Positions 8,233-60,746 of a DNA stretch of 64,000 bases are shown here, in pieces. The notes beneath the pieces were generated by a model, which did not search any database, had not been told where the DNA came from, and saw only the letters and a list, made by a program, of their open reading frames with translations. Source of the stretch: Macrostomum lignano (lineage: Eukaryota); contig NIVC01001865.1 of assembly GCA_002269645.1 (NCBI GenBank), positions 42,769-106,768 of the forward strand, read 5' to 3'. The translations under genes were made by a program, and so were the position numbers. Numbering within the stretch: position 1 is the first letter of the stretch; every line of letters starts with the position of its first letter.

Positions 8233-16492
<8,260 letters not shown>

Positions 16493-27362: not shown

Positions 27363-29705
<2,343 letters not shown>

Positions 29706-35256: not shown

Positions 35257-36243
35257 ATTGTCATTTCTTGCAGTCTAAGTAAACCTTACTCGTAGCTCGT
35301 ATGCTATGTACTCCTATATATAGTAGCTTAATTAATAGAATTGCAACGCATATCCAATCCATGCACTCAGGTGGGAGAGCATTTACAGTATTTACATACA
35401 TCTACATGCGATCAAAGTGCTTGGGTAGTATTGAGTGCATATAACTAACGGTATTATGCCAACTAACATATAGATGTACTTGTATTCACTGGATTTAAAC
35501 AACACTCTTCTGGGGGTGTACACTGTACAAGCGTGTACATGTGGGGTGAGGCTCATATTTTCAGTAGTATGTGTTGTCAAATTAAAATACATTCTGTGTG
35601 AGGTGTGCCAACTGCATAATATTGCATATTATAATTGGGAATTACATGTAATCATAGCTATTAGGCTATTAATTACAATCAATTTTCATTTTTCACCATT
35701 TTACTTATAGGGCTGGATGGTGAGTGGACTACTAGACTTAAACAAGAAACCGCGCGCCGTTTTTAAATAAGTAGAAGATATTTTAAGTGTACTCGTACAC
35801 TAACTAACTCTGAGAGAGAGTAAGATATGAGAGATAAGCTAGCCAACTATAGCAAGCTTTTGTTTTGCAAAAAGTGAATGAAACAACGAAGTAACAAAAC
35901 AACATGTGGAGGAGCTAAGTTGGGTGGACGATATTTTCTATCTCAAGTTATAGACGTACACGGAAAGCTTGATTCTATTTTTAGCGCAGTGTACAGGGAC
36001 ACTGGAGGGGCAAATGTACACTGAAGCAAGGTCTACTGTCGCTAGAGATTTCCAGGAAATTTTCTGCCTGTAGCTTTGATCCTCTTTGGATGATATAAAC
36101 CAGTACTTTCGCAAATCTGAGTTGTTCTTAACGTGTGTCTCGGTTCTTGTTTCTGCGCTTTAAAAAATTCGTCTTCATTTCAATTCCTTAAAATTTCTTC
36201 TATTCACAAAACCTCGCCCTTTTACTTTACTAAGCAAACAAAA

Positions 36244-37613
36244 ATGCTAACTAAGAAGACGGTAGAGCTGCCTCTGCTGCTGCTGCTGCTCCTATTCTTG
36301 TTAACTGGCACTGCTGAATGCTTAGCCGACTCTCTCGGGGCCGACGCTGGCAGCAGCAGGTTGAAGTCCGGTATTGAAAAAAGCGACTCTGCCGATGGGG
36401 CGGCGGCACCGGCTGCAGCAGTCCACAAGTCGGCGGGAACCCGAAGCGACACTGCAAGTGAATCCGCCCTGCCAGAGCAGTGGCGCGCCTGCAGACTCGT
36501 CGGCGGCACGGGCAGGAAGAGGACGCTGACGCTAGACTGCCAACGACGCGGTCTTTTCGAAGTGCCGGCCGACCCGCCGGCCGGCGTGACGGTGGTGCGC
36601 CTCAACGGCAACATACTTCGCGACCTGCGCTCGGTGCCGCTTCCTGGCGTCACCCGCCTCGAGCTGGTCGGCTGCGGCATCGCTAACATTCGCCAATACG
36701 CTCTGAGCCAAGCCAGGAGTCTGCAGCACCTGGACCTCACCAATAACGAGCTGACCAGCCTGAGTGCCGGCGCGCTCAGCCCTCTGAGCAGCCTTCAGGA
36801 CCTGACGCTGGCGCAGAACCAGTTCGCCAACCTGCCAGACCTGCCCTGCGACCGGCTGCCTCGGCTGCAATCGGTCAACTTGGCCGCCAACGACATCGCC
36901 AGCCTGAGGCTGCCTACCGGCTACTCGAAGTGCGCCAGCCTGCACAGCCTCACTCTGTCTGGGAACTCCCGGCTAACTGAGCTGCGCACCGGCGACCTGG
37001 ACGCTCTGGCTGGCGGCGGCCGGCTGCGGGTCCTCAGATTGGCCGCCTGTCCGCTGACCAGGCTGGACTTGAACGCCCTGGACCCGGTGAGGGACAGCCT
37101 GCAACACCTGGACCTGTCCGGCAACCGGTTGTCAACGAAGCCGATGCTGAACTGCCTGGCGAGGCTTCGCAATCTCCGCTGGCTGCGACTTCATCAGGTT
37201 GCCATGGCGAGTCTTCGACCGGGTGACCTGCGGGGCGGTTTGGCGACTTTGCGTAGCCTACAGGTGGGGTTTTTCTACCAGTAAAAAAACTTGAAACTTG
37301 CAAGAAACTTGTTGAAATCACTTGAAATTCAACGAGCAGAAGTACACGATATACATTTATCAGGACAACAATTCACAAATCTCAGGTCACGTGCTCCAAC
37401 GCTCACGGCAAGCTGCTAACCCTGGCCCCAGTAACCTTTGGCCAAGCCACCAAAAGCATAGAGCAGCTTCAGTTGGACGCATGCGGCCTCACCAACTTCG
37501 ATTATCAGGTAAGCAAATCATGTATGTAACTGTCCGATCCTACTTACAGCAGTAGGTGCTGAGCGTTGCTGTAAAGTTCAGACCGCGTCTAATGAGTGCT
37601 GAGCTGGGTGCTG

Positions 37614-37657
<44 letters not shown>

Positions 37658-37980
37658 GCTAACTAACTAACTAACTAACTAACTTACTAACTAACTAACT
37701 AACTTACTAACTAACTAACTAACTAACTTACTAACTAACTAACTAACTAACTAACTAGCTAACTAACTTACTAACTAACTAACTAACTAACTTACTAACT
37801 AACTAACTAACTAGCTAACTAACTAACTAACTATTTAAATTATTAACTAAGTAACTAAGTACTAACTATTTAACTTACTAACTAGCTAACTAACTAACTA
37901 ACTAACTAACTAGCTAACTAACTTACTAACTTACTAACTAACTAACTAACTAACTTACTAACTAACTAACTAACTAACTT

Positions 37981-38014
<34 letters not shown>

Positions 38015-38068
38015 AAACTAACTAACTAACTAGCTAACTAACTTACTAACTAACTAACTAACTAACTT

Positions 38069-38124
<56 letters not shown>

Positions 38125-38125
38125 G

Positions 38126-38159
<34 letters not shown>

Positions 38160-38160
38160 T

Positions 38161-38198
<38 letters not shown>

Positions 38199-38252
38199 AA
38201 ACTAACTAACTAACTAGCTAACTAACTTACTAACTAACTAACTAACTAACTT

Positions 38253-38308
<56 letters not shown>

Positions 38309-38556
38309 GCTAACTAACTTACTAACTAACTAACTAACTAACTTACTAACTAACTAACTAACTAGCTAACTAACTAACTAACTATTTAACTTACTAACTA
38401 GCTAACTAACTAACTAACTAACTAACTAGCTAACTTACTAACTTACTAACTAACTAACTAACTAACTTACTAACTAACTAACTAACTAACTAGCTAACTA
38501 ACTAACTAACTAACTAACTAGCTAACTAACTTACTAACTAACTAACTAACTAACTT

Positions 38557-38595
<39 letters not shown>

Positions 38596-41500
38596 TACTA
38601 ACTAACTAACTAACTTACTAACTAACTAACGAACTAACTAACTAACTAACTAACTAAATAACTAATGAAATAATTAATTAAATTCTTAATAAGCTACCCA
38701 CACTGGCTCAATTTACATCTGTACTCAACGGCTCAATTCGTCCGCAACCAACCCCAGGTGATGGGCCTCTCCAAGCTGCAGTCGCTGGACCTGGCCGACA
38801 ACAAGCTGACCGAGGTGCCGCGCGGCCTGCCGGACTCGCTGACCCACCTGGGCCTGAACGGCAACCGCATCAGTCACGTGAGCGGCGCCAGAATGACGCG
38901 ACTGGCCAACCTGCGCCGGCTCGACCTGTCCGGCAACCGGCTGTCCAGCGTGGCCGGCGCGTTCAGCTTCATCTGTTGGACGCCGGCGCTGGCCGAGCTG
39001 GAGCTGGACTCGATGGAGCTGCGCGTGATGGAGCAGCGAGCCGGTTTTGACGGGCCGCCGCCAGCGTTCCCGGCTCGGGCGGCGCAGCTCGTTGGGAAGA
39101 AGAGGAAAAAGGTTAGCGTTGGATAAATGCATGCTTGGGCGCAACCTAGGGATTCACCCGGCCGTTTCTATTGGCAACACACACACACATGTAAGTCGCT
39201 ATTGGACGGAATAGTAGTCACGTGACTGCTCTCAGCCAATTGCGACTAACATGTGTGTGTTGCCAATAGAAACGGCCGGGTGAATCCCAAGGTTGCGCAT
39301 ATATGGATCATGGGATTAGGGATTCGGTGATTGGGATTAGAGATTTAGTGATTGGGATTAGAGATTCAGTGATTGGGATTAGAGATTCGGTGATTGGGAT
39401 TAGAGATTCGATAGTTGGGATTAGAGATTCGATAGTTGGGATTAGCGATTCGATAGTTAGCATTAGAGATTCGATAATTAGGATTAGAGATTCGACAGTT
39501 GGGATGAGAGATTCAATAGTTGGGATTAGCGATTCGATAGTTAGCATTAGAGATTCGATAATTAGGATTAGAGATTCGACAGTTGGGATTAGCGATTCGA
39601 TAGTTGGGATTAGAGATTTGATAGTTGGGATTAGAGATTTGATAGTTGGGATTAGAGATTCGATAGTTGGGATTAGAGATTCGATAGTTGGGATTAGAGA
39701 TTCGATAGTTGGGATTAGAGATTCGATAGTTGGGATTAGAGATTTGTAGTTGGGATTAGCGATTCGATATTTGGGATTAGAGATTCGATATTTGGGACTA
39801 GAGATTCGATTATTTTAATTCAAGATTCGATAAATGTGATTAAAGATTCGGTTTTTAAGATTAAGGATTTAGTGATAGGGATTAGAATACCAAATTGGAA
39901 GAATAATTTTAGGGACTTTTGGATCATGTTGAAGTTGAACTATTGTCAAGTTTTCGGTAGCTAAAGTAGGTATGGAAATAGAACAGAAGTAATTATTAGT
40001 TGAACAAAATCCTGAATCTCAACCAATATTTTCATGCCAGCTGCTCCGTACCTACTCGGCCAGCTTGTTGGCCTCCGCCCAGGCCTATTGCCGCAGTCAG
40101 CCTCCGCCCGACATCAGCAGCCTCCCAGCTGACGATCACCAACCGCCCAATTTTAAATCCAATGAAAATTCGGGCGATTCCTCCGTGGCTCTGGGTAGCA
40201 GCTCGGAAAGTAATGCAGGTGGACTGTCAACAGGTGGCATCGCTGGTCTGCTGTGCTCTGTTGGTACCATCTTTGCGGCTGCCTTGGGATTTGGATATCG
40301 GAAAAGGTCAGAATATGAGGGTGCCAAATCCTCAAAGTGCCACATCCTCAAGTACCACATCCTCAAAGTACTACATCCTCAAAGTGTCATATCCTCAAAG
40401 TGTCACATTCTTAAGTACCACATCCTCAAAGTGCCACATCCTCAAAGTACCACATCCTCAAAGTGCCACATTCTCAAAGTGCCACATCCTCAAGTACCAC
40501 ATCCTCAAAGTGCCACATCCTCAAGTACCACATCCTCAAAGTGTCATATTCTCAAAGTGTCACATTCTTAAGTACCACATCCTCAAAGTGCCACATCCTC
40601 AAAGTGTCATCCTAAGTGCCACATCCTCAAAGTGTCATATTCTCAAAGTGTCACATTCTTAAGTACCACATCCTCAAAGTGTCATATTCTCAAAGTGTCA
40701 CATTCTTAAGTACCACATCCTCAAAGTGCCACATCCTCAAAAGTGTAGCATCCTTACTGAGTCAAATTCACTAAGCCAACATTCAGCCAGTCGTGTATGA
40801 TGAATGATTTTCTGATTTGCCTTTGTTCATGCGCCTCCACTGCCCCCGCTGTGCCATCCATAGTCTGTTCCAAGTGTACAGACGTCTCAGAGGCTCCAAC
40901 AACGCCTCGGCCGTTACGAACAGCACCGCCGCCTCGGGCACTCAAGGCCAACGCCGAATCCAAGGCAACAGCCGGGAGACGCTGATGTCTCAAAATCATG
41001 GAAATCCAACGTACGAGCGGATAAACGGACAAAATATCGAGCTGAGTCTTCTTGCCACCCGCCCGCTGGATGCCCAGCAACTTCTGGAAGAGCGACAGCA
41101 GCCCATTTCTAGGTAAGAGTGATTGATTTGTAACTATGGTAACCCAAAATATATATTACGAAGGGAGCGGATGATTGAAGAAAGGAGCGAATGATTGGAG
41201 ACTGGAGCGGATGAACTGAGAATAGAGCGGATGAATGGAGAATGAAGCGGATGATTGGAGAATAGAGCGGATGAATGGAGAATAGAGCGGATGAATGGAG
41301 AATGAAGCGGATGATTGGAGAATAGAGCGGATGAATGGAGAATAGAGCGGATGAATGGAGAATAGAGCGGATGAATGGAGAATAGAGCGGATGAATGGAG
41401 AATGAAGCGGATGATTGGAGAATAGAGCGGATGAATGGAGAATGGAGCGGATGATTGGAGAATGAAGCGGATGATTGGAGACTAGAGCGGATGATTGGAG

Positions 41501-42232
41501 AATGATGGAGCGAAGGGAGTTGAGGAAGGCTGCGGATGAACAGAAAAGAGATGCGCCCAAACTGTCAGTTCCAGTCCCCGAGACCAGCAGCGGCAGCAGC
41601 ACCAACAACAGCAGCAAGAATCAACTTCCGATTCTGATTCACACGAATCATTCGACGAAGACATCCCGGAGACCGCGCGTCTGTCGCGTGCAGAAGGCGG
41701 CAACAGGAGCCCTCAATATGCAGTGTGCGTCCCACGGCGCTGCTGATCGGCCTCTCGGCTGATCTGGACCAACTGAGCTCTCCCAATTACGAAGCAGCTG
41801 CTGCTTTCATCCGGGTTGACGAGACCACCTTCGAAGCGGTGCCGGTAAGACGCTGGTTCTGTATGATTTTAATCTACGATACTCGTATTTATTACGAGTG
41901 CTTGTTGACTGTAAAGCATTTCTTGGAAACTTCACAACTTCTTTCAGGAGGACTTAACCTCTGCGCAAAGATATTTTATTATGCTGACGAAGAACCTGAT
42001 TTCAAACGGTGGCGGCCTCTTGCCCTTTCTCAATAGTCTGTTGGAAGACTCGAGTACACGTGGGAAAGTAAAAATTATCGCTAACTTCAAAGACGACACC
42101 CCAGAGTTCGGCAGCCAGATACGAGAGTACTGTCCGCTGTTGCACCGGATTTATTTGAAGTATCCAGTCCGGATCATTCCTTGGGAAGACATTCCTGACA
42201 AGTCCTTGAGCCATCTTGCTTTGTTTATTTGA
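36244..42232 (+). CDS. LRR transmembrane receptor with a divergent TIR-like C-terminus (Toll-like receptor architecture)
   Basis: Exons 36244-37263, 37386-37508, 38758-39111, 40041-40306, 40882-41112, then either 41724-41844 plus 41948-42232 (799 aa, TIR-like) or 41569-41746 (723 aa, TIR-less). Signal peptide, LRRNT (LDCQRRGLFEVP), many LxxLxLxxNxL repeats, TM GGIAGLLCSVGTIFAAALGFGY, and NPTY. The LRR-TM part is secure; the TIR call is by motif resemblance. Confidence 0.75.
37614..38660. repeat. (CTAA)n microsatellite with interspersed TACTAAC and CTAG variants, intron 2 of the LRR receptor
   Basis: Directly visible, about 1.05 kb. Confidence 0.97.
39139..39298. mobile_element. 160-bp foldback / MITE-like element in LRR receptor intron 3
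   Basis: Arms of about 65 bp, GCGCAACCTAGGGATTCACCCGGCCGTTTCTATTGGCAACACAC..., are nearly perfectly inverted. The loop contains AGTCACGTGACT. Confidence 0.8.
39310..39810. repeat. 21-bp minisatellite GGGATTAGAGATTCGATAGTT, intron 3
   Basis: Directly visible. Confidence 0.95.
40325..40745. repeat. CACATCCTCAA(A)GT-based minisatellite, intron 4
   Basis: Directly visible. Confidence 0.9.
41160..41510. repeat. 20-bp minisatellite GAGAATAGAGCGGATGAATG, intron 5
   Basis: Directly visible. Confidence 0.9.
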
Positions 42233-42249
42233 CTGAGACTGAGAGAGTG

Positions 42250-42890
42250 TTATTGATTATCTTATCGGCTCCCAAACCCCCTTCCCTGTCTGTTTTCAAT
42301 CCTCGCTAAGTGTACAACACAAGGTTGGATGGGTTATCGATTCTCTTATCGGCTCCAAACCCCCTTCCCTGTCTGTTTTCAATCCTCGCTAAGTGTACAA
42401 CACAAGGTTGGATGGGTTATCGATTCTCTTATCGGCTCCAAACCCCCTTCCCTGTCTGTTTTCAATCCTCGCTAAGTGTACAACACAAGGTTGGATGGGT
42501 TATCGATTCTCTTATCGGCTCCAAACCCCCTTCCCTGTCTGTTTTCAATCCTCGCTAAGTGTACAACACAAGGTTGGATGGGTTATCGATTCTCTTATCG
42601 GCTCCAAACCCCCTTCCCTGTCTGTTTTCAATCCTCGCTAAGTGTACAACACAAGGTTGGATGGGTTATCGATTCTCTTATCGGCTCCAACCCCCCTTCC
42701 CTGTCTGCTTTCAATCCTCGCTAAGTGTACAACACAAGGTTGGATGGGTTATCGATTCTCTTATCGGCTCCAACCCCCCTTCCCTGTCTGCTTTCAATCC
42801 TCGCTAAGTGTACAACACAAGGTTGGATGGGCTATCGATTCTCTTATCGGCTCCAACCCCCCTTCCCTGTCTGCTTTCAATCCTCGCTAA
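42250..42890. repeat. 83-bp tandem repeat, about 7.7 copies
   Basis: ORF starts recur every 83 bp (42310, 42393, ... 42725); begins about 20 bp after the receptor stop codon. Confidence 0.97.
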
Positions 42891-43778
42891 GTAAAACAAC
42901 ACAGTTGGTTTTACCTTAATGTTTTTTACCTGCATAGAAAATTACTCTGTACCTTCTTTTTTAGTAGTTAGATGATAATTTAATAATTATTTTATTTTCA
43001 AATCAGTAGAGTAGAGTGCAATGGGTAATATACCTATGCAGAGCTGTACCAGTAGACGTCGGTGCAGTGCATTTGCATAATACTGACTTAACAACTAACT
43101 GCAGTTAATCGTTTGTCGGTTGGAATGAAATTGCCGAATGTGATAGAAATATTTGGGCATAAATAATGTACAAGTAGTTCTTAAAATTATTTTTTACAAG
43201 CATATTTACAGAAAGTTTATACCTCCCTTCTGGAACTCGAAATTGTCGAGTCGCGTCCATTGACATAACGTTTTTGCGCCTTTACAGTAGAAATTTTAAT
43301 TATGAAAATGGTTTGATTTCAATTCAATTCAAATTTATGAATAGTTAGTTGCTGATGTATCATTTTTATGATATTTACTGAATTGATTTGAGTTTAGTTT
43401 TGCCTATTCCATAACGCAATTCATTGTGTAACTGGTTGGCTTATACGTATCTTAGTACTTGGTCCATGCATGCGTTTGTCAAATAAAAAATCATTTCGAA
43501 TTCCGATTGTATACGTACAGGTATATTTTTGTCTGCTTTGGTTGATGTCAAAACATAAAATACCCTGATTAAATTTAGTGTGACTGCGTACTTAGCTCGT
43601 ATCCGCGCGCTTGTGTGCCTGCTCAGAGGAGTCGGCGGAATGGGCAGTAATGCCTCTCGTCGGTTGTGTGACATTGTGACAATACGAGTATCGCTTAAAG
43701 CACGTCAGGGTTCATACAGCCCCCTGCCTGCAATAAAAATTTGCATCAGCGCTATCTATCCACCAGTTGACACATTAA

Positions 43779-44205
43779 GCTGGTGAACCATTACTAAAGT
43801 GCTGGTGAACCATTACTAAAGTGCTGGAGAACCATTACTAAAGTGCTGGTGAACCATTACTAAAGTGCTGGTGAACCATTACTAAAGTGCTGGTGAACCA
43901 TTACTAAAGTGCTGGTGAACCATTACTAAAGTGCTGGTGAACCATTACTAAAGTGCTAGTGAACCATTACTAAAGTGCTGGTGAACCATTACTAAAGTGC
44001 TGGTGAGCCATTACTAAAGTGCTGGAGAACCATTACTAAAGTGCTGGTGAACCATTACTAAAGTGCTAGTGAACCATTACTAAAGTGCTGGTGAACCATT
44101 ACTAAAGTGCTGGTGAACCATTACTAAAGTGCTAGTGAACCATTACTAAAGTGCTGGTGAACCATTACTAAAGTGCTGGTGAACCATTACTAAAGTGCTG
44201 GTGAA
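43779..44205. repeat. 22-bp minisatellite GCTGGTGAACCATTACTAAAGT
   Basis: Directly visible, about 19 copies. Confidence 0.97.
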
Positions 44206-46477: not shown

Positions 46478-47218
46478 ATGATTGCTAAGTTGACCCTAAG
46501 CATTACCATGGCAGTGCTGCTCCTGCAGGTTGGCTCATCCCAGCAGCAAGCCGCTTGCCCTGCCCCGTTTTATAACGAGGCCGGTAAGTGCATCTTCGTG
46601 AACTATTCTAAAGGTTTTACCTGGTGCGAGGCCAACCGGCAATGCGCAGCCATCGACGGCCAGCTCATCAACTCGTACGAAACATTGAAGCTGCTCAGCA
46701 GCATGCCAAGCATGGATAGCCCTATACATCTGTGGCTCGGGGTGACTGACCTCGCGAATGAGCGACTGACGTCTCGGTCAGGCTGGCAGACTGTCAACGG
46801 CAATGAAGACCTACCGCTGGACAACGCACTGTGGTACAGCGGGATACCGAACAACATCGGGAATCAGGACTGTGTGATCCAGGCGAATGACAATAGTCAT
46901 CGGTTTGTTGATCTGCGCTGCTTTTATACCGCCGGATTCGCTTGCGAATTCGCTCCATCTCATGTGCCACCAAGCGCCACGTGGGTGAATGTTCCTTTCA
47001 AACGCACTGAGTACAATACTCAGTACTGCTACACCGAACTGCAGCCAATTAGCAACATACTTGAGTGCTTTGAAGTTGCATTCATCAAGTTTCCGAATAT
47101 CAGGAGCGTGCTGTACAACAAAGTCCTTGGGCAATGCCGACTACTGCAGTTCAGCGACGCCCAAGTTGAGCAGGAAATCGAGAACAGCAACGACTGGGTA
47201 AAGTTCGCGCTTCAGTGA
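46478..47218 (+). CDS. Secreted C-type lectin domain protein with a C-terminal Cys-containing extension, single exon, 246 aa
   Basis: Signal peptide; CPAPF...KCIFV...TWCEANRQC, LWLGVTD, W.SGIPNN...DCV...FVDLRC...FACE. Confidence 0.9.
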   Translation: MIAKLTLSITMAVLLLQVGSSQQQAACPAPFYNEAGKCIFVNYSKGFTWCEANRQCAAIDGQLINSYETLKLLSSMPSMDSPIHLWLGVTDLANERLTSRSGWQTVNGNEDLPLDNALWYSGIPNNIGNQDCVIQANDNSHRFVDLRCFYTAGFACEFAPSHVPPSATWVNVPFKRTEYNTQYCYTELQPISNILECFEVAFIKFPNIRSVLYNKVLGQCRLLQFSDAQVEQEIENSNDWVKFALQ

Positions 47219-48553: not shown

Positions 48554-51500
48554 TGACATACGCTCGTGCAATAGTCTATGGCCGCTGCGCCCAAATGCCG
48601 CCTCCCTCATCCCTTCCTAATATATAAGTGTCCTAGTTTCATAATCTTGTTACAAGCCCCGCTAGCATTAATGTGGTCCTAAAGCCAAATAAACAAGCAA
48701 AGCAAGATACGAGCTTCGTTATTCATCAAGCACTAGAGTTGCCAGCAGAGCATCACAATGGCGTCGCAAGCACTTGGACGCATCGAACTTTCAGAACCTG
48801 AGCGCGCCCTGACGTGGCTAACAGCATTCCGTGCGCTCGCTCGAGCCAAGAAATGGAAAGATGAAGGCACCAACAGAGAAATTGCGGATAACTTTCTAGC
48901 ACTATGCGGATTGCCAGCACTTGAAAAGCTAACATCTCTGGTGGCCCCAAAGAAGATCGACGAATTGGAGTTTTCTGCAATCGAGGCCGCCATTCAAGGT
49001 TACCTTCAACCAAAGACGCGCATCACCATTGCCGAGCGAACTGGCTTCTACACCATCCGGCAACAGCACGACGAGTCTCTTCCGGATTACCTCTCGCGCC
49101 TAAGAAAGGCCGCCCAACATTGCAAATTCGATTTGCTGAAAGAGGCAGAAAGCCCAGAAGAGGTCATGATTCAACTGGCGTTAGTCGCTGGCATGCACTG
49201 TCCCACAACACAGCAAAAAGTTCTAGAAGCTATGCAGATCAAGGAGCTGTCGGTCGAGGAAATCGTAGATTTTGTTGCCCAGATCAAGCAAGTGAAAGAG
49301 TTCGTGTCCAAACAAGCCTCCACGCCGTTCACGACCTCCCCACCAAAGGAAACTGTTCCGGAGATTCACCATGGCTCTTTGGCTACAAAGAGCAACTTTA
49401 CCACTCCGCGCAAGATTGGACCACGCACTGGACAGTGTGGTTACTGCGGTCAAGTCCATGTTGCTGGAAAGTGCCCAGCGTTTGGAAAAACCTGCAGCAA
49501 ATGCTCAAAACCAAACCACTTTGCATCGGTATGTCGATCCTCCCGACCATGCCAGCTCCACAACGTCGAGGAGCTCTCAAACGCAGACACGCCGCAACCA
49601 GATACCACGTCCCTTCTTCACCTTGGGGACGCGGACACGATTCACGCTATCGACTCGGCACTGGAAAACATAGTCATCAATGGTGCTCAAATCCCAATGC
49701 AAGTGGACACCGGTGCTGCGGTGAGCGTCATTTCAAGCACTCTCTGGGAGTCACTCCGCCGCCCGGCCCTCCAGAAGTGTCATCGCCGTCTTCAAGCCTA
49801 CGATGGCCACACGCTTAAAGTCCTCGGCAAGTTATCAACCGCCATTGAGCTTCGCGGCAAGTTTCACCCTGCTGAACTGATCGTTGTACAGGCCTCTAAG
49901 ACATTCGGTCTGTTAGGCCGTGACTTATTGAACTCAGCGCAAGTCCACAGCACATGCTCCACTAGCATCGGTAACAGCGCGGATGTCCTACCCGTGATTA
50001 AAGGCATCAAGGCCAAAATGGAGACCATCGCTGGTGCCACTCCGAGGTTTTGCCGTGCGCGTCCCGTGCCTGTCGCCCTGGAATCCTCCATCAACGCTGA
50101 ATTGGACAAGCTGCAGCAGCTGGGCGTGATAGAACCAGTTGACGGCCCGGTGAGCAATGCTTCTCCTGTCGTCTTGGTCAAAAAGAAAGATGGAACCCTA
50201 GGGATGTGCGCTGACTACAGCGTTCACGTCAACGCAAAGATCAAGTCAGAGGACTATCCCATCCCTAGCGTGGAGCACCTATTTTCCAAACTAAAAAACG
50301 CCAAGAAGTTTGCCAAAGTAGACTTGAGGTCGGCCTATTGGCAGATCGAATTGGACGAGGCTGCTCAGGATCTCTCAATAATTAACACATCCAAAGGATT
50401 ATTTCGCGTGAAAAGACTTGAGATGGGAATGAAGAATGCATCTTTTATTTTTCAGCGCGCGATGGAAAGTATTCTGTCAGACCTAAAGGGCGTTCTCATC
50501 TACCAAGACGACGTATTAGTTTTCGCCGAAAACAGTGATTCACTACAGAAAAGACTTCGTGCTGTGAAGACTAGGCTGGCAGAAAAGCATGTCACCATCA
50601 ACGAAAGCAAATGCATCGAGGCGACTGATGAAATATCATTTCTGGGATTTAAAATTTCTGCTGCTGGCATCCAACCCGATGATCGATTGGTTGAGAAAAT
50701 CCGCAGCATCGCACAACCCAAAGACAAGAAGGAGCTGTAACGATTTGTTGGTCTAATAAAATTCTTTGGAAGGCTAGTACCCAATTTCTCTGGAAAGATC
50801 CAGCCGCTAAATCGACTGCGCAGAGCGGACGCAAACTTTCAGTGGACAGCTGAGTGTGACCGAGCCTTCAGACAACTCAAGACGGAGATTGCCTCTCAAC
50901 CCATAGTCCAGCCATACTCATTAGAAAAGGAACTCACTCTTACCACAGATGCCTCCAAGGGAGCGCTTGCAGGAGTGGTCACGCAAGATGGCCATCCTGT
51001 GATCTATATTTCTCGGTGTCTTTCTACTGCCGAACAAAACTATTCGAACATAGAGCGAGAAGCCCTTGCCGTTTTTTGGGCAGTCAGCCGGCTGAAGCAC
51101 TATTTACTGGGCCGCCACTTTACAATACAGACGGATCATAAGCCTCTCGAACAGCTCTTCGGCCAGTCTCGCGGGGTGCCGCTGAACACCTCCGCTCGCA
51201 TTAGCAGATGGGCACTCGCGATGATGCACCTTGACTACACCATACGCTATATACCAGGAGAGAAGATTCCACATGCCGATGCGCTTTCTCGCCTACGCTT
51301 CACTGACTCATCTAACGATTCGACGGAAGTCTGCGAAGCCATTGATTGCGTTGCCTTCGAGCCGTCTGTCATTCCAAGAACCGGGTTGCCGCAGAGCTAG
51401 AGTTGGATGAGCTCATAAAAAAAGTGATGCACCGAATTCGCTCGGGAAACTGGGCTGGCTGTTCTCAGGCTGAGAAACCATTCCAGGCCGTATCGCAATG

Positions 51501-52885
51501 CCTAACTATCGAGGACGGCTTACTGTTCAAGGGTCGCCAGGTCTACATTCCGCCAAGACTGCGGAAAGAAGCTTTTCGTGCAGCGCATGACACTCACTCT
51601 GGGTCTCTGGCGACACTCAACTTCATGAGCTTGTCCTGCTGGTGGCCTGGAATGCGCGCTGACATCGAGCGATTTGTCAGCCAGTGTGATGTATGCAACA
51701 GGCTGCGGCCCAGATTGGGGAAGACCAGAGACACCTGGCCATCGACTGAATACCCGTTTCAAAAGCTTCACGTTGACTGGGCGTACGTAAAGAATGTTGG
51801 AAACATCCTGATAGCAGTCGACTCTCACTCTGGTTGGATCGAGGCCTTTCCCTGTAAAGATCGATCCACAGATCAGATCATTAAATGCCTCAGAAATGTT
51901 TTCACACGCTTTGGTGTGCCTGAACTTTTAGTTTCGGACAATGCTCCGGAGTTCGTCAGCGATTCACTGAGAAGCTGGCTGCACCAAAATGGCATAAAGA
52001 AGATGGAATCCCCAACTTATTATCCCCAGGCCAATGGATCGGCTGAGCGAGCAGTCCAGACAGTCAAACGAGCTCTGCGGGCCTGGAACGAACGAACCAC
52101 CCACGCTGAATTTGTTCCCTATCTACAGCGATTGCTGTTTCATCACCGAAACTCATCCACGTGTAGGGGCAAGACGCCAGCTGAGATTGTTTTCGGACGC
52201 CAACTACGCGCTCCTGTAGTCTCCACGTTCAACCAAGGCGAGCGCGTTCTGGATCAGCCAACTTTGGATGTTCCACCCTCCACTGTCGAATACGTGATGA
52301 ACCGAGGCCGCAACACGGCCTTCGTGTTGGACGGGAGCGAACTGCGTTTGGCAAGCGACAACCAACTTGCTCCACTGCCACACGACGATGAAGAATCAAT
52401 GGCAGGAGATCCCGCAAACACGGAGGCAGGGAACCCCAGCGACAATTCGACCCAAGGCGCGCAAGAACAAGAAGCAGGTGGAATTCGCCGTAGCACCCGG
52501 ATGCGTCGCCAACCAGACCGCTACTCCTCATGACTGCTAAAAAAACGCATTAGCTACACATTACGAGTAACCAAAATGAAACCTGACACGCTGGATTTGA
52601 ATTAGTTATCTGTTGAGTTCCTAACATAAAGTTTACATTGTTCGGAGACATAGTTCAACTCTTTCCTTCTGGAGGGAGACATGACATACGCTCGTGCAAT
52701 AGTCTATGGCCGCTGCGCCCAAATGCCGCCTCCCTCATCCCTTCCTAATATATAAGTGTCCTAGTTTCATAATCTTGTTACAAGCCCCGCTAGCATTAAT
52801 GTGGTCCTAAAGCCAAATAAACAAGCAAAGCAAGATACGAGCTTCGTTATTCATCAAGCACTAGAGTTGCCAGCAGAGCATCACA
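48554..52885 (+). mobile_element. Ty3/Gypsy LTR retrotransposon, Mag-like, full length, pol disrupted
   Basis: Identical 204-bp LTRs (48554-48757 and 52682-52885, TG...CA); 5-bp TSD TAGTG; PBS-like TGGCGTCGC from 48759; PPT GGAGGGAGA at 52671. Domain order is gag, PR, RT, RH, IN. Confidence 0.97.
48758..52533 (+). pseudogene. gag-pol polyprotein with a premature TAA (50738-50740) and a frameshift near 51374
   Basis: Twin knuckles CGYCGQVHVAGKC and CSKCSKPNHFASVC; protease VDTGA; RT YQDD; RNase H TDAS...EREAL...TDHKPL; integrase HHCC plus D (VDS), D (SDN), E (AER). The frame continues after the TAA (KEL*RFVGLI). Confidence 0.92.
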
Positions 52886-59760: not shown

Positions 59761-60746
59761 TCAGAAGGAGGTCCGACGCCCGGTTGCAACGCGCGCGGTG
59801 GACGTTGCCGGCAGCCAAGACGGATGCGGATGAGGAGGCTGGGGTGGTGCAGCGGCTGTAGCGTTCTCGCTGAGGCTGGCGCCGCTGCTGGCCACGGTGG
59901 CCTGGCTCTGGTGCCGCAGCTGCTCGCAGGTGTCGGTGTTGGTGCACTGCGTGGCTGTCAAGCAGGTTGATCCGTTGGGCCCGTTGCGCTGCCAGACATC
60001 AAGGTTGGCCTCTGACTCGGCCTCCTCCAGCTTGGCACGCTCGGCCGCCACCGCAGCGGCTGCCGCGGCCACATCATCCTCCTCCGCTGCTTCGTTGTCG
60101 TCGCCGAGTTCGACAGCATCTCGTCGCATCGCTTCAAGGTCGACTGCTTGAGACCGCGGCCTCGGCTGGCTGCTGTGCTGGTGCAGCGACGACGCACCGT
60201 GGCAGTTGCCCTGGCTGGCCAGGTCGAAGTGGTGCAGCTCCCAGTTCTTGTCGCGCTCGAGCAGCCGCGGCCCGAGCAGCGAGATGAGGAAAGCGCCAAC
60301 TGGAGCCGTCAGCATGATGACGATGGCCGCTATGGTGAGAACCTGGCGGCCCATGTCCACAGCCCGGTCGTCCCGAGGCTCCTGAGACAGCGCCATGTCC
60401 AGCGCCACCGGCCCGATCGCCGCCTGCACCGTGGCCTTGGGCAGCCAGGAGAACGGCACGAACAGGCGCTCGCGGAAGCTCAGCTCGGTGCCCAGCATGC
60501 ACAGGAAGCTGGCCAGCATGCGGAACACCAGGCCGATGCCAACCACGGCGAGACCCTTCGCCAGGGCTGGCGGCTGAATCTTCTGGAAGTCAATCTGGCC
60601 GCCGATCAGGCCGAACAGCATCGGCTGCATGAACCACCACATAGTGTCCAGCGGCTCCAGCATCGGGTTGTCCTCCTCCGCCCAGCCGTCCCAGCGGCGC
60701 CAGCCGTAGCCAGCCACGAAGGCCAGGGTGAGCACTCCGAGTGCGC
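59761..60746 (-). CDS. slc9b: SLC9B/NHA-type Na+/H+ antiporter, last exon; upstream exons not found in the window
   Basis: Acceptor ccgcag|GC at 60746. GALGVLTLAFVAG, QPMLFGLIG, RMLASFLC...LSFRERLFVPFSWLPKATVQAAIGPVALD and TAPVGA are NHA1/NHA2 hallmarks. Confidence 0.92.

What the first reader, a model, noticed from the sequence alone, without database searches (positions are those of the whole stretch)
41569..41844. TIR-less versus TIR-bearing switch: two acceptors in different frames, or a 1-nt frameshift
Seen: the phase-2 donor at 41112 fits two acceptors. Acceptor 41569 gives ...QQQQESTSDSDSHESFDEDIPETARL...PQYAVCVPRRC* with no TIR (723 aa). Acceptor 41724 enters the TIR frame (799 aa). 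Both frames look coding and overlap at GTGTGCGTCCCACGG. One extra C in the CCC run would fuse them into YAVCVPTALLIGL (851 aa), placing a box-1-like YAVCV at the TIR start. Inference: this is alternative splicing into decoy and signalling forms, a disabled allele, or a homopolymer assembly error.
Basis: partly seen in the sequence, partly recalled or inferred. Interest (0 to 1): 0.7.

Follow-up and report, generated by a model that had tools for sequence, protein, structure and literature searches.

The report
One-base gap breaks a flatworm gene
The "two reading frames" are the two halves of one ordinary exon of a Macrostomum lignano LRR membrane-protein gene, separated by a single missing C; this is most likely a sequencing or assembly error, not a splicing switch, and no test shows the tail domain to be a TIR.

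Summary
The sequence facts reproduce. The phase-2 donor lies at 41112. Acceptors at 41569 (frame 2, TGA at 41744) and 41724 (frame 1) give 723 aa and 799 aa, and a fused form gives 851 aa.

The interpretation does not hold.
- **Organism and gene.** The window is Macrostomum lignano, a hidden polyploid whose published assemblies are PacBio-based. The only relatives among 1.84 billion proteins are three UniProt models of the same gene.
- **The break.** Two of those models (one 100% identical to the window, one with 6 differences) use acceptor 41569 and read straight through as ...GGNRSP-SICSVRPTALLIGL.... That reading needs one extra base at the C-run 41710-41712.
- **No switch.** In intact copies both acceptors would keep the C-terminal domain, so no domain-less isoform exists there. 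Acceptor 41724 is one of five AGs that fit by phase alone.
- **The "TIR".** It fails Pfam, PDB, a targeted TIR HMM (109 of 1000 shuffles score as well) and hhalign (P=0.28). AlphaFold models are of low confidence. A published survey finds no TLRs in M. lignano.

Verdict: a 1-nt homopolymer shortfall, either a consensus error (about 0.6) or a genuinely disabled copy (about 0.3). Low interest.

The parts
36244..37263 (+). Exon 1: start codon, hydrophobic signal-like N-terminus (residues about 6-28) and the first block of leucine-rich repeats. Phase-0 donor CAG|gtgggg.
   Evidence: Translation and splice sites. Pfam LRR_8 E=5.5e-21. Hydropathy peak 2.21. Identical to P0001 from residue 40 on.
37386..37508 (+). 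Exon 2 (LRR).
   Evidence: Canonical AG/GT sites. The junctions match P0001/P0003.
38758..39111 (+). Exon 3 (LRRs and the end of the ectodomain).
   Evidence: Pfam LRR_8 E=3.1e-20. The junctions match P0001/P0003.
40041..40306 (+). Exon 4: stalk plus the single transmembrane helix (GGIAGLLCSVGTIFAAALGFGY, residues about 564-585). Phase-2 donor AAG|gtcaga.
   Evidence: Second hydropathy peak 1.94. Sequence. P0003 uses this donor, while P0001 uses an internal GT at 40253.
40882..41112 (+). Exon 5 (cytoplasmic, low complexity), ending in the phase-2 donor TAG|gtaaga at 41112/41113.
41569..41844 (+). Exon 6. It is one coding exon in the intact copies. Here it reads in frame 2 up to the C-run and in frame 1 after it. 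Phase-0 donor CCG|gtaaga at 41844/41845.
   Evidence: P0001 and P0003 contain PISSSSPRDQQ...GGNRSPSICSVRPTALLIGL...FEAVP|EDLTS without interruption.
41710..41712 (+). C-run (gagCCCtca), where the window is one base short of the intact copies. AGC CC[+1] TCA gives S-P-S. This is the actual frame break.
   Evidence: Adding one base here makes the window model 851 aa and 100% identical to P0001 at every aligned residue. No canonical intron can give SP|SICS from the window sequence, by direct reading of codons.
41731..41733 (+). It is not the site of the break.
   Evidence: A fusion here would read QYAVCVPTALL, whereas P0001/P0003 read SICSVRPTALL.
41744..41746 (+). TGA reached in frame 2 after the break. 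It is a premature stop, 98 nt upstream of the last exon junction.
41722..41724 (+). It lies inside the exon and would be in frame with the C-terminal domain in every copy.
   Evidence: It is one of five AGs that fit. The UniProt models do not use it.
41948..42232 (+). Exon 7: the rest of the roughly 135-aa C-terminal domain of unknown family, with stop TGA at 42230-32.
   Evidence: P0001/P0003 match it up to ...LHRIYLKY.

Best explanation
Window 36244-42232 (+) holds a seven-exon Macrostomum lignano gene. It encodes a type-I membrane protein with a signal peptide, about 480 aa of leucine-rich repeats, one transmembrane helix, a Q/S/R/E-rich linker and a roughly 135-aa C-terminal domain with no detectable relatives outside this species.

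Exon 6 (41569-41844) is a single coding exon. In this window it is one base short at the C-run 41710-41712 compared with other copies of the gene. The upstream half therefore reads in frame 2 and the downstream half in frame 1, and frame 2 runs into TGA at 41744.

The shortfall is most likely a homopolymer consensus error of a long-read assembly of a highly redundant polyploid genome. In that case the real product is the 851-aa protein reading ...GGNRSPSICSVRPTALLIGL.... There is no splicing switch.

Shown: the frames, the sites, the intact reading in two other copies, and the absence of TIR similarity. Inferred: that the missing base is an error rather than a real mutation.
For: - **Same gene elsewhere.** An exhaustive HMMER search of 1.84e9 representatives found one relative, P0001. 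Its 90% cluster holds three M. lignano UniProt entries.
- **Intact reading.** P0001 and P0003 read ...AEGGNRSPSICSVRPTALLIGL....
- **One base explains it.** With one base added at 41710-12, the window model is 851 aa and identical to P0001 at all aligned residues. P0003 differs at six positions, so it is an independent copy, and it has the same join.
- **Not a splicing effect.** The codons CCT and TCA would have to share a T, so no intron can produce that join from the window sequence.
- **Same haplotype.** There are zero other amino-acid differences from P0001 over about 750 residues. This argues for the same haplotype rather than an old pseudogene.
- **Assembly background.** PMC5730564 reports that ML2 and Mlig_3_7 are PacBio/Canu assemblies. 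It also reports 180 Mb in blocks at least 95% identical, only 32-64% error-free bases by REAPR, and ORF intactness of mapped transcripts that differs between the two assemblies. PMC10468722 describes the hidden polyploidy.
Against: - No reads and no DNA of the other copies could be reached. Error and real allele are therefore not separated.
- A three-base homopolymer is short for a consensus error.
- The window's tandem arrays show 0% indels over about 2.6 kb, so the local base quality may be good.
- I do not know which assembly the window comes from. A HiFi-based assembly would make an error much less likely.
- The UniProt models are computer predictions. I infer, rather than know, that they were translated from uninterrupted genomic DNA.
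Confidence: 0.6

Rival explanations
1. The one-base deletion at 41710-12 is real. One of the several copies (allele, homeologue or extra-chromosome copy) of this gene in the polyploid M. lignano genome carries a recent frameshift. Its mRNA, spliced at 41569, ends at TGA 41744 and would encode a 723-aa protein with the LRR ectodomain, the transmembrane helix and the linker but no C-terminal domain. It is probably also degraded, because the stop lies 98 nt before the last exon junction.
For: - The frame break is in the sequence as given.
- Intact sister copies exist, so selection on any one copy is relaxed.
- A recent whole-genome duplication and an unstable karyotype are documented (PMC10468722; PMC5730564).
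- The tandem arrays in the window show no indel noise.
- The distance from the stop to the last junction is 98 nt.
Against: Apart from the single base, the copy is identical in protein to the intact P0001, so the mutation would have to be very recent. Indel errors in the published assemblies of this genome are far commoner than fresh frameshifts (PMC5730564).
Confidence: 0.3
2. One reading: regulated use of two acceptors (41569 and 41724) from the phase-2 donor produces a domain-less decoy receptor and a domain-bearing signalling receptor.
For: Both AGs are followed by open frames. If the C3 allele is real, use of 41724 would bypass the frameshift and restore a 799-aa domain-bearing product.
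Against: - In the intact copies both acceptors lead into the same domain frame, so no domain-less isoform arises there.
- The UniProt models use only 41569.
- Five AGs fit the phase by chance.
- Acceptor 41724 has no polypyrimidine tract (listing).
- The 'signalling' label rests on a TIR call that fails every test.
Confidence: 0.05
3. One reading: the missing base is in the CCC at 41731-33, giving ...SPQYAVCVPTALLIGL... with a box-1-like YAVCV.
For: This also yields an 851-aa open frame.
Against: Both intact copies read SICSVRPT across 41713-41736, which is frame 1 and not QYAVCVPT.
Confidence: 0.02

Closest known systems
Residual homopolymer indels in long-read (PacBio CLR/Canu) assemblies, specifically the M. 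lignano ML2 and Mlig_3_7 assemblies
   Same: A single-base length difference at a homopolymer splits one ORF into two frames, while other assembled copies of the same gene are intact. The genome paper itself uses ORF intactness of mapped transcripts as an accuracy measure (PMC5730564).
   Different: The run is only three bases long. The assembly of origin of this window is unknown to me, and no reads were available.
Toll-like receptors (LRR ectodomain, one TM helix, cytoplasmic TIR)
   Same: Signal peptide, LRR ectodomain and a single TM helix. Tollo and other LRR proteins are among the distant LRR-only hits.
   Different: No TIR is detectable by Pfam, PDB, a targeted HMM or hhalign. There is no LRRCT cysteine cluster hit. 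A published survey found no TLRs in the M. lignano genome (PMC8609888).
TIR-less decoy receptor isoforms made by alternative splicing (soluble or truncated TLR/IL-1R forms; from general knowledge)
   Different: Here the domain-less form arises only through the one-base shortfall and not through splice choice. Intact copies cannot make it from these two acceptors.
LRR-only adhesion and matrix proteins (chaoptin, artichoke, podocan)
   Same: These are the best non-Macrostomum matches to the ectodomain, at 23-34% identity over 25-53% of the query.
   Different: They lack this cytoplasmic tail. The similarity is generic LRR similarity.
PPM/PP2C phosphatases (the automatic UniProt name of P0001-P0003)
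   Same: Only the name given by the source. The LRR-plus-phosphatase architecture is known from PHLPP (general knowledge).
   Different: No PP2C-family Pfam hit at E<=10 on P0003 or on the 266-aa cytoplasmic region. The precomputed Pfam list of P0001 holds LRR families only. No PP2C chain appears among PDB hits at E<=10.

Membership tests
TIR domain (Pfam PF01582 / PF13676) | Significant match to a TIR sequence profile | tested here: not met
   Pfam gives no family at E<=1 or E<=10 on the C-terminal 186 aa and 266 aa. A custom HMM from 40 non-redundant TIR domains, run with --max, scores -1.0 bit, and 109 of 1000 shuffles score at least as high. hhalign gives probability 0.2%, P=0.28.
TIR domain (Pfam PF01582 / PF13676) | Conserved boxes 1-3 ((F/Y)DAFISY, RDxxPG, FW) | tested here: not met
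By eye there are only loose echoes (RYFIMLTKNLIS against KTVFVLSENFVKS, IYLKYP against TYLEWP). The HMM and hhalign pick the same short stretch, without significance.
TIR domain (Pfam PF01582 / PF13676) | Flavodoxin-like five-stranded alpha/beta fold | tested here: inconclusive
   Single-sequence AlphaFold2 models have mean pLDDT 38.9 and 46.5. Foldseek against the PDB gives no match at E<=0.001 and no TIR among the top 50. The model is too poor to decide.
Toll-like receptor | LRR ectodomain plus one TM helix plus a cytoplasmic TIR in one polypeptide | tested here: not met
   LRRs are present and the TM helix is present. The TIR is not. A literature survey reports 0 TLRs in M. lignano (PMC8609888).
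Alternative 3' splice-site switch | Both acceptors used in mRNA, giving products that differ in the domain | not testable with these tools
   No RNA-seq access. Indirectly, the UniProt models use 41569 only. In intact copies both acceptors keep the domain. Five AGs fit by phase.
Homopolymer indel (assembly error or real frameshift allele) | Exactly one base of length difference at a homopolymer relative to otherwise identical intact copies | tested here: met
   Adding one base at 41710-12 gives 100% identity to P0001 over all aligned residues. P0003 has the same join.
Homopolymer indel (assembly error or real frameshift allele) | Reads decide between error (no C3 reads) and allele (C3 reads present) | not testable with these tools
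   No read data. DNA of the other copies could not be retrieved.
PPM/PP2C phosphatase | Match to PP2C-family profiles | tested here: not met
   No PP2C, PP2C_2 or SpoIIE hit at E<=10. No PP2C chain in the PDB search at E<=10. No targeted --max test was run for this family.

The most novel reading that the evidence does not exclude
The roughly 135-aa C-terminal domain (ALLIGLS...RYFIMLTKNLIS...KVKIIANF...IYLKYP) is a TIR-like signalling module that has diverged beyond profile detection. It would sit on an LRR-TM receptor in a phylum reported to have lost Toll-like receptors. In addition, the C3 copy in this window would be a genuine truncated, domain-less allele that coexists with intact copies and acts as a decoy.
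Probability: 0.04. Interest if true: 0.55.

Novelty: not a real feature. Interest (0 to 1): 0.1.

Why it matters
As it stands, this matters only as a caution for annotating this genome. A single base at a short C-run turns an 851-aa receptor-like protein into an apparent pair of "isoforms", and translating the wrong frame produced a motif (YAVCV) that looked meaningful.

The gene itself is mildly interesting. It is a lineage-restricted LRR membrane protein with an orphan cytoplasmic domain, present in several near-identical copies in a hidden polyploid. If the frameshift proved real, it would be one small example of early duplicate decay after whole-genome duplication.

Tried and rejected
- **First homology search.** The word-index search with the fused C-terminus found nothing. 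This was later explained: the tool seems to list only proteins up to about 1.75 times the query length, so it could not return the 772-aa P0001.
- **DNA of other copies.** P0001 and P0003 are not on record. The window ORFs 36244-37284, 36133-37284 and 46478-47218 are not on record. A metagenome pattern scan found nothing.
- **Paralogues in the window.** None were found by tblastn.
- **Codon-usage scoring.** Log-odds scoring of the three frames was informative only downstream of the break (frame 1 +9.9). It was uninformative for 41570-41709, where frame 0 scores highest, and for the 18 nt between the two C-runs.
- **Structure.** Two single-sequence AlphaFold2 runs gave low confidence, so the Foldseek result is meaningless.
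- **Programmed -1 ribosomal frameshifting at G AGC CCT CAA.** Rejected by inspection, because there is no X XXY YYZ slippery heptamer.
- **A tiny intron joining the frames.** Rejected, because the join needs an added base, not a removed one.
- **An apparent second frameshift in exon 2.** Rejected: acceptor 37386 gives a clean frame that matches P0001.
- **PPM phosphatase identity (UniProt's automatic name).** No Pfam or PDB support.

Full report
**What is in the sequence.**

The region is eukaryotic, with short exons and introns filled with tandem arrays. I built a seven-exon model on the + strand with canonical GT-AG sites:
- E1 36244-37263
- E2 37386-37508
- E3 38758-39111
- E4 40041-40306
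- E5 40882-41112
- E6 41569-41844
- E7 41948-42232

Acceptor AG|T at 41569 enters frame 2. That frame reads SSSPRDQQRQQHQQQQQESTSDSDSHESFDEDIPETARLSRAEGGNRSPQYAVCVPRRC and stops at TGA 41744-46. Acceptor AG|T at 41724 enters frame 1 (VRPTALLIGLSADLD...), which continues through E7 to TGA 42230-32.

**How special the two-acceptor fit is.**

It is not special. Of 75 AG dinucleotides between 41130 and 41845, five give an uninterrupted frame to the final stop when joined to the phase-2 donor: 41661, 41694, 41697, 41724 and 41778. Acceptor 41724 is preceded by ...ccctcaatatgcag, with no pyrimidine tract. A codon-usage log-odds score, trained on the gene's other exons, clearly prefers frame 1 downstream of the overlap (+9.9 against -8.3 and -13.6). 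It cannot show that frame 2 is coding upstream, where frame 0 is also open and scores higher.

**Whose gene it is.**

An exhaustive HMMER search of 1.84 billion representative proteins with the C-terminal 156 aa returned a single protein, P0001 (E=1.3e-74). Its 90% cluster has three members, all UniProt entries of Macrostomum lignano: A0A1I8GD08, A0A1I8IMJ0 and A0A1I8HY75. A full-length search found no other close relative. It returned only generic LRR matches (podocan, chaoptin, artichoke, Tollo) to the ectodomain.

The protein has a hydrophobic N-terminal signal-like segment, LRRs (Pfam LRR_8 E=5e-32 on P0003), one TM helix at residues about 564-585, a Q/S/R/E-rich linker and a roughly 135-aa C-terminal domain.

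**The decisive comparison.**

P0001 and P0003 both use acceptor 41569 and read straight through the junction...AEGGNRSP-SICSVRPTALLIGLSADLD....

In the window, S-P is AGC CCT in frame 2, and S-I-C is TCA ATA TGC in frame 1. The two would have to share the T at 41713. The continuous reading therefore needs one more base at the C-run 41710-41712 (AGC CCC TCA, or equivalently a doubled T). No intron can produce it.

When one base is added there, for comparison only, the window model is 851 aa and identical to P0001 at every aligned residue. The exceptions are P0001's missing ends and an 18-aa skip in the TM helix caused by a different donor. P0003 differs at six positions, so it is a separate copy, and it has the same join.

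The "box-1-like YAVCV" is out-of-frame text.

**Consequence for the switch idea.**

In an intact copy, acceptor 41569 gives the 851-aa protein. Acceptor 41724, if ever used, would give a 799-aa protein lacking 52 aa of linker. Both retain the C-terminal domain. A domain-less product arises only because the window is one base short. The "switch" is therefore a by-product of the frame break and not a property of the gene.

**Error or real allele.**

In favour of an assembly error:
- The window is otherwise protein-identical to an intact copy.
- M. lignano is a hidden polyploid with an unstable karyotype (PMC10468722).
- Its published ML2 and Mlig_3_7 assemblies are PacBio/Canu assemblies. About 180 Mb lies in blocks at least 95% identical, REAPR error-free bases are 32-64%, and ORF intactness of mapped transcripts differs between the two (PMC5730564).

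In favour of a real allele:
- The run is only three bases long.
- The tandem arrays in the window show no indel noise.
- Redundant copies are free to decay.

I put the error at about 0.6 and a genuinely disabled copy at about 0.3. If the break is real, the stop lies 98 nt upstream of the last exon junction. By the usual rule, which has not been tested in flatworms, this would make the mRNA a target of nonsense-mediated decay.

**Whether the tail is a TIR.**

Every test I could run is negative:
- Pfam gives nothing at E<=10 on the 186-aa or 266-aa cytoplasmic region or on P0003.
- phmmer against all PDB chains gives only low-complexity noise.
- For a targeted test, I collected 120 TIR proteins, cut out the domains, and built an HMM from 40 non-redundant ones. 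I scored the domain with all filters off. It scored -1.0 bit, and 109 of 1000 shuffled versions score at least as high.
- hhalign gives probability 0.2%, P=0.28.

Both profile programs pick the stretch I had noticed by eye (AQRYFIMLTKNLIS against the TIR beta-C/alpha-C motif), but the match is not significant.

AlphaFold2 without an alignment gives pLDDT 38.9 and 46.5. Foldseek then finds nothing meaningful.

A published survey reports no TLRs in the M. lignano genome or in other flatworms (PMC8609888). UniProt's automatic name, "PPM-type phosphatase domain-containing protein", has no Pfam or PDB support either. The domain is best described as an orphan, lineage-restricted domain of unknown fold.

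**Verdict.**

The coordinates and frames are as described. The explanation is a one-base shortfall at 41710-12 in a single exon, most likely a consensus error and otherwise a recently disabled copy. The splicing-switch and TIR readings are not supported. Interest is low.

The only reading with some novelty is a cryptic TIR-like domain in a phylum thought to lack TLRs, combined with a real decoy allele. My data cannot strictly exclude it, but I rate it at about 4%.

Noticed in passing
window 37614-38665, 39311-39850, 40321-40741, 41165-41503, 42249-42892, 43779-44000: Introns 2 to 5 of the gene each carry a different tandem array: (ACTA)x263, a 21-mer x26, a 16-mer x27 and a 20-mer x17. An 83-mer x7.7 array starts 17 nt after the stop codon, and a 22-mer array follows. 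This fits the 15% simple and tandem repeat content reported for this genome.
   Followed up: partly
window about 9436-14339, minus strand: A gene with an ANF_receptor (Venus-flytrap) ectodomain (ORF 13596-14339, E=5e-8) and a tyrosine-kinase domain (ORF 9436-9876, E=1e-41; start of the domain at the end of ORF 11107-12933). This is the architecture of venus kinase receptors.
   Followed up: partly
window 48758-52533, plus strand: ORFs of a Ty3/gypsy-type LTR retroelement. The gag, aspartyl protease and reverse transcriptase are in one ORF (48758-50740), and the integrase is in another frame (51346-52533), so the polyprotein frame is interrupted. I did not reconstruct it.
   Followed up: no
window 28566-29705 (+), 46478-47218 (+), 59761-60735 (-): Other coding pieces: a homeodomain ORF (E=5e-12), a C-type lectin ORF (E=1e-5) and a Na+/H+ exchanger fragment (E=2e-10).
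   Followed up: no
window 40253 (internal GT donor in exon 4): UniProt model P0001 splices from CT|gtgctc at 40252/40253 to acceptor 40882 and so deletes 18 aa of the transmembrane helix. P0003 uses the donor at 40306/40307. This is either a mis-prediction or a TM-less isoform.
   Followed up: partly
P0001-P0003 (UniProt M. lignano entries): All three models start at the same residue (LKSGIEKSD, 39 aa downstream of the window's ATG and signal peptide). Two end at ...LHRIYLKY, 22 aa before the stop. The more divergent third copy, P0002, breaks off in exon 5. The shared ends suggest models built from one partial transcript mapped to several copies.
   Followed up: no
tool behaviour: the search for homologous proteins returned only proteins up to about 1.75 times the query length (maximum 258 aa for a 147-aa query, and 1381 aa for a 789-aa query). 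A domain-sized query therefore cannot retrieve a long protein that contains it, which is why one search missed P0001.
   Followed up: partly
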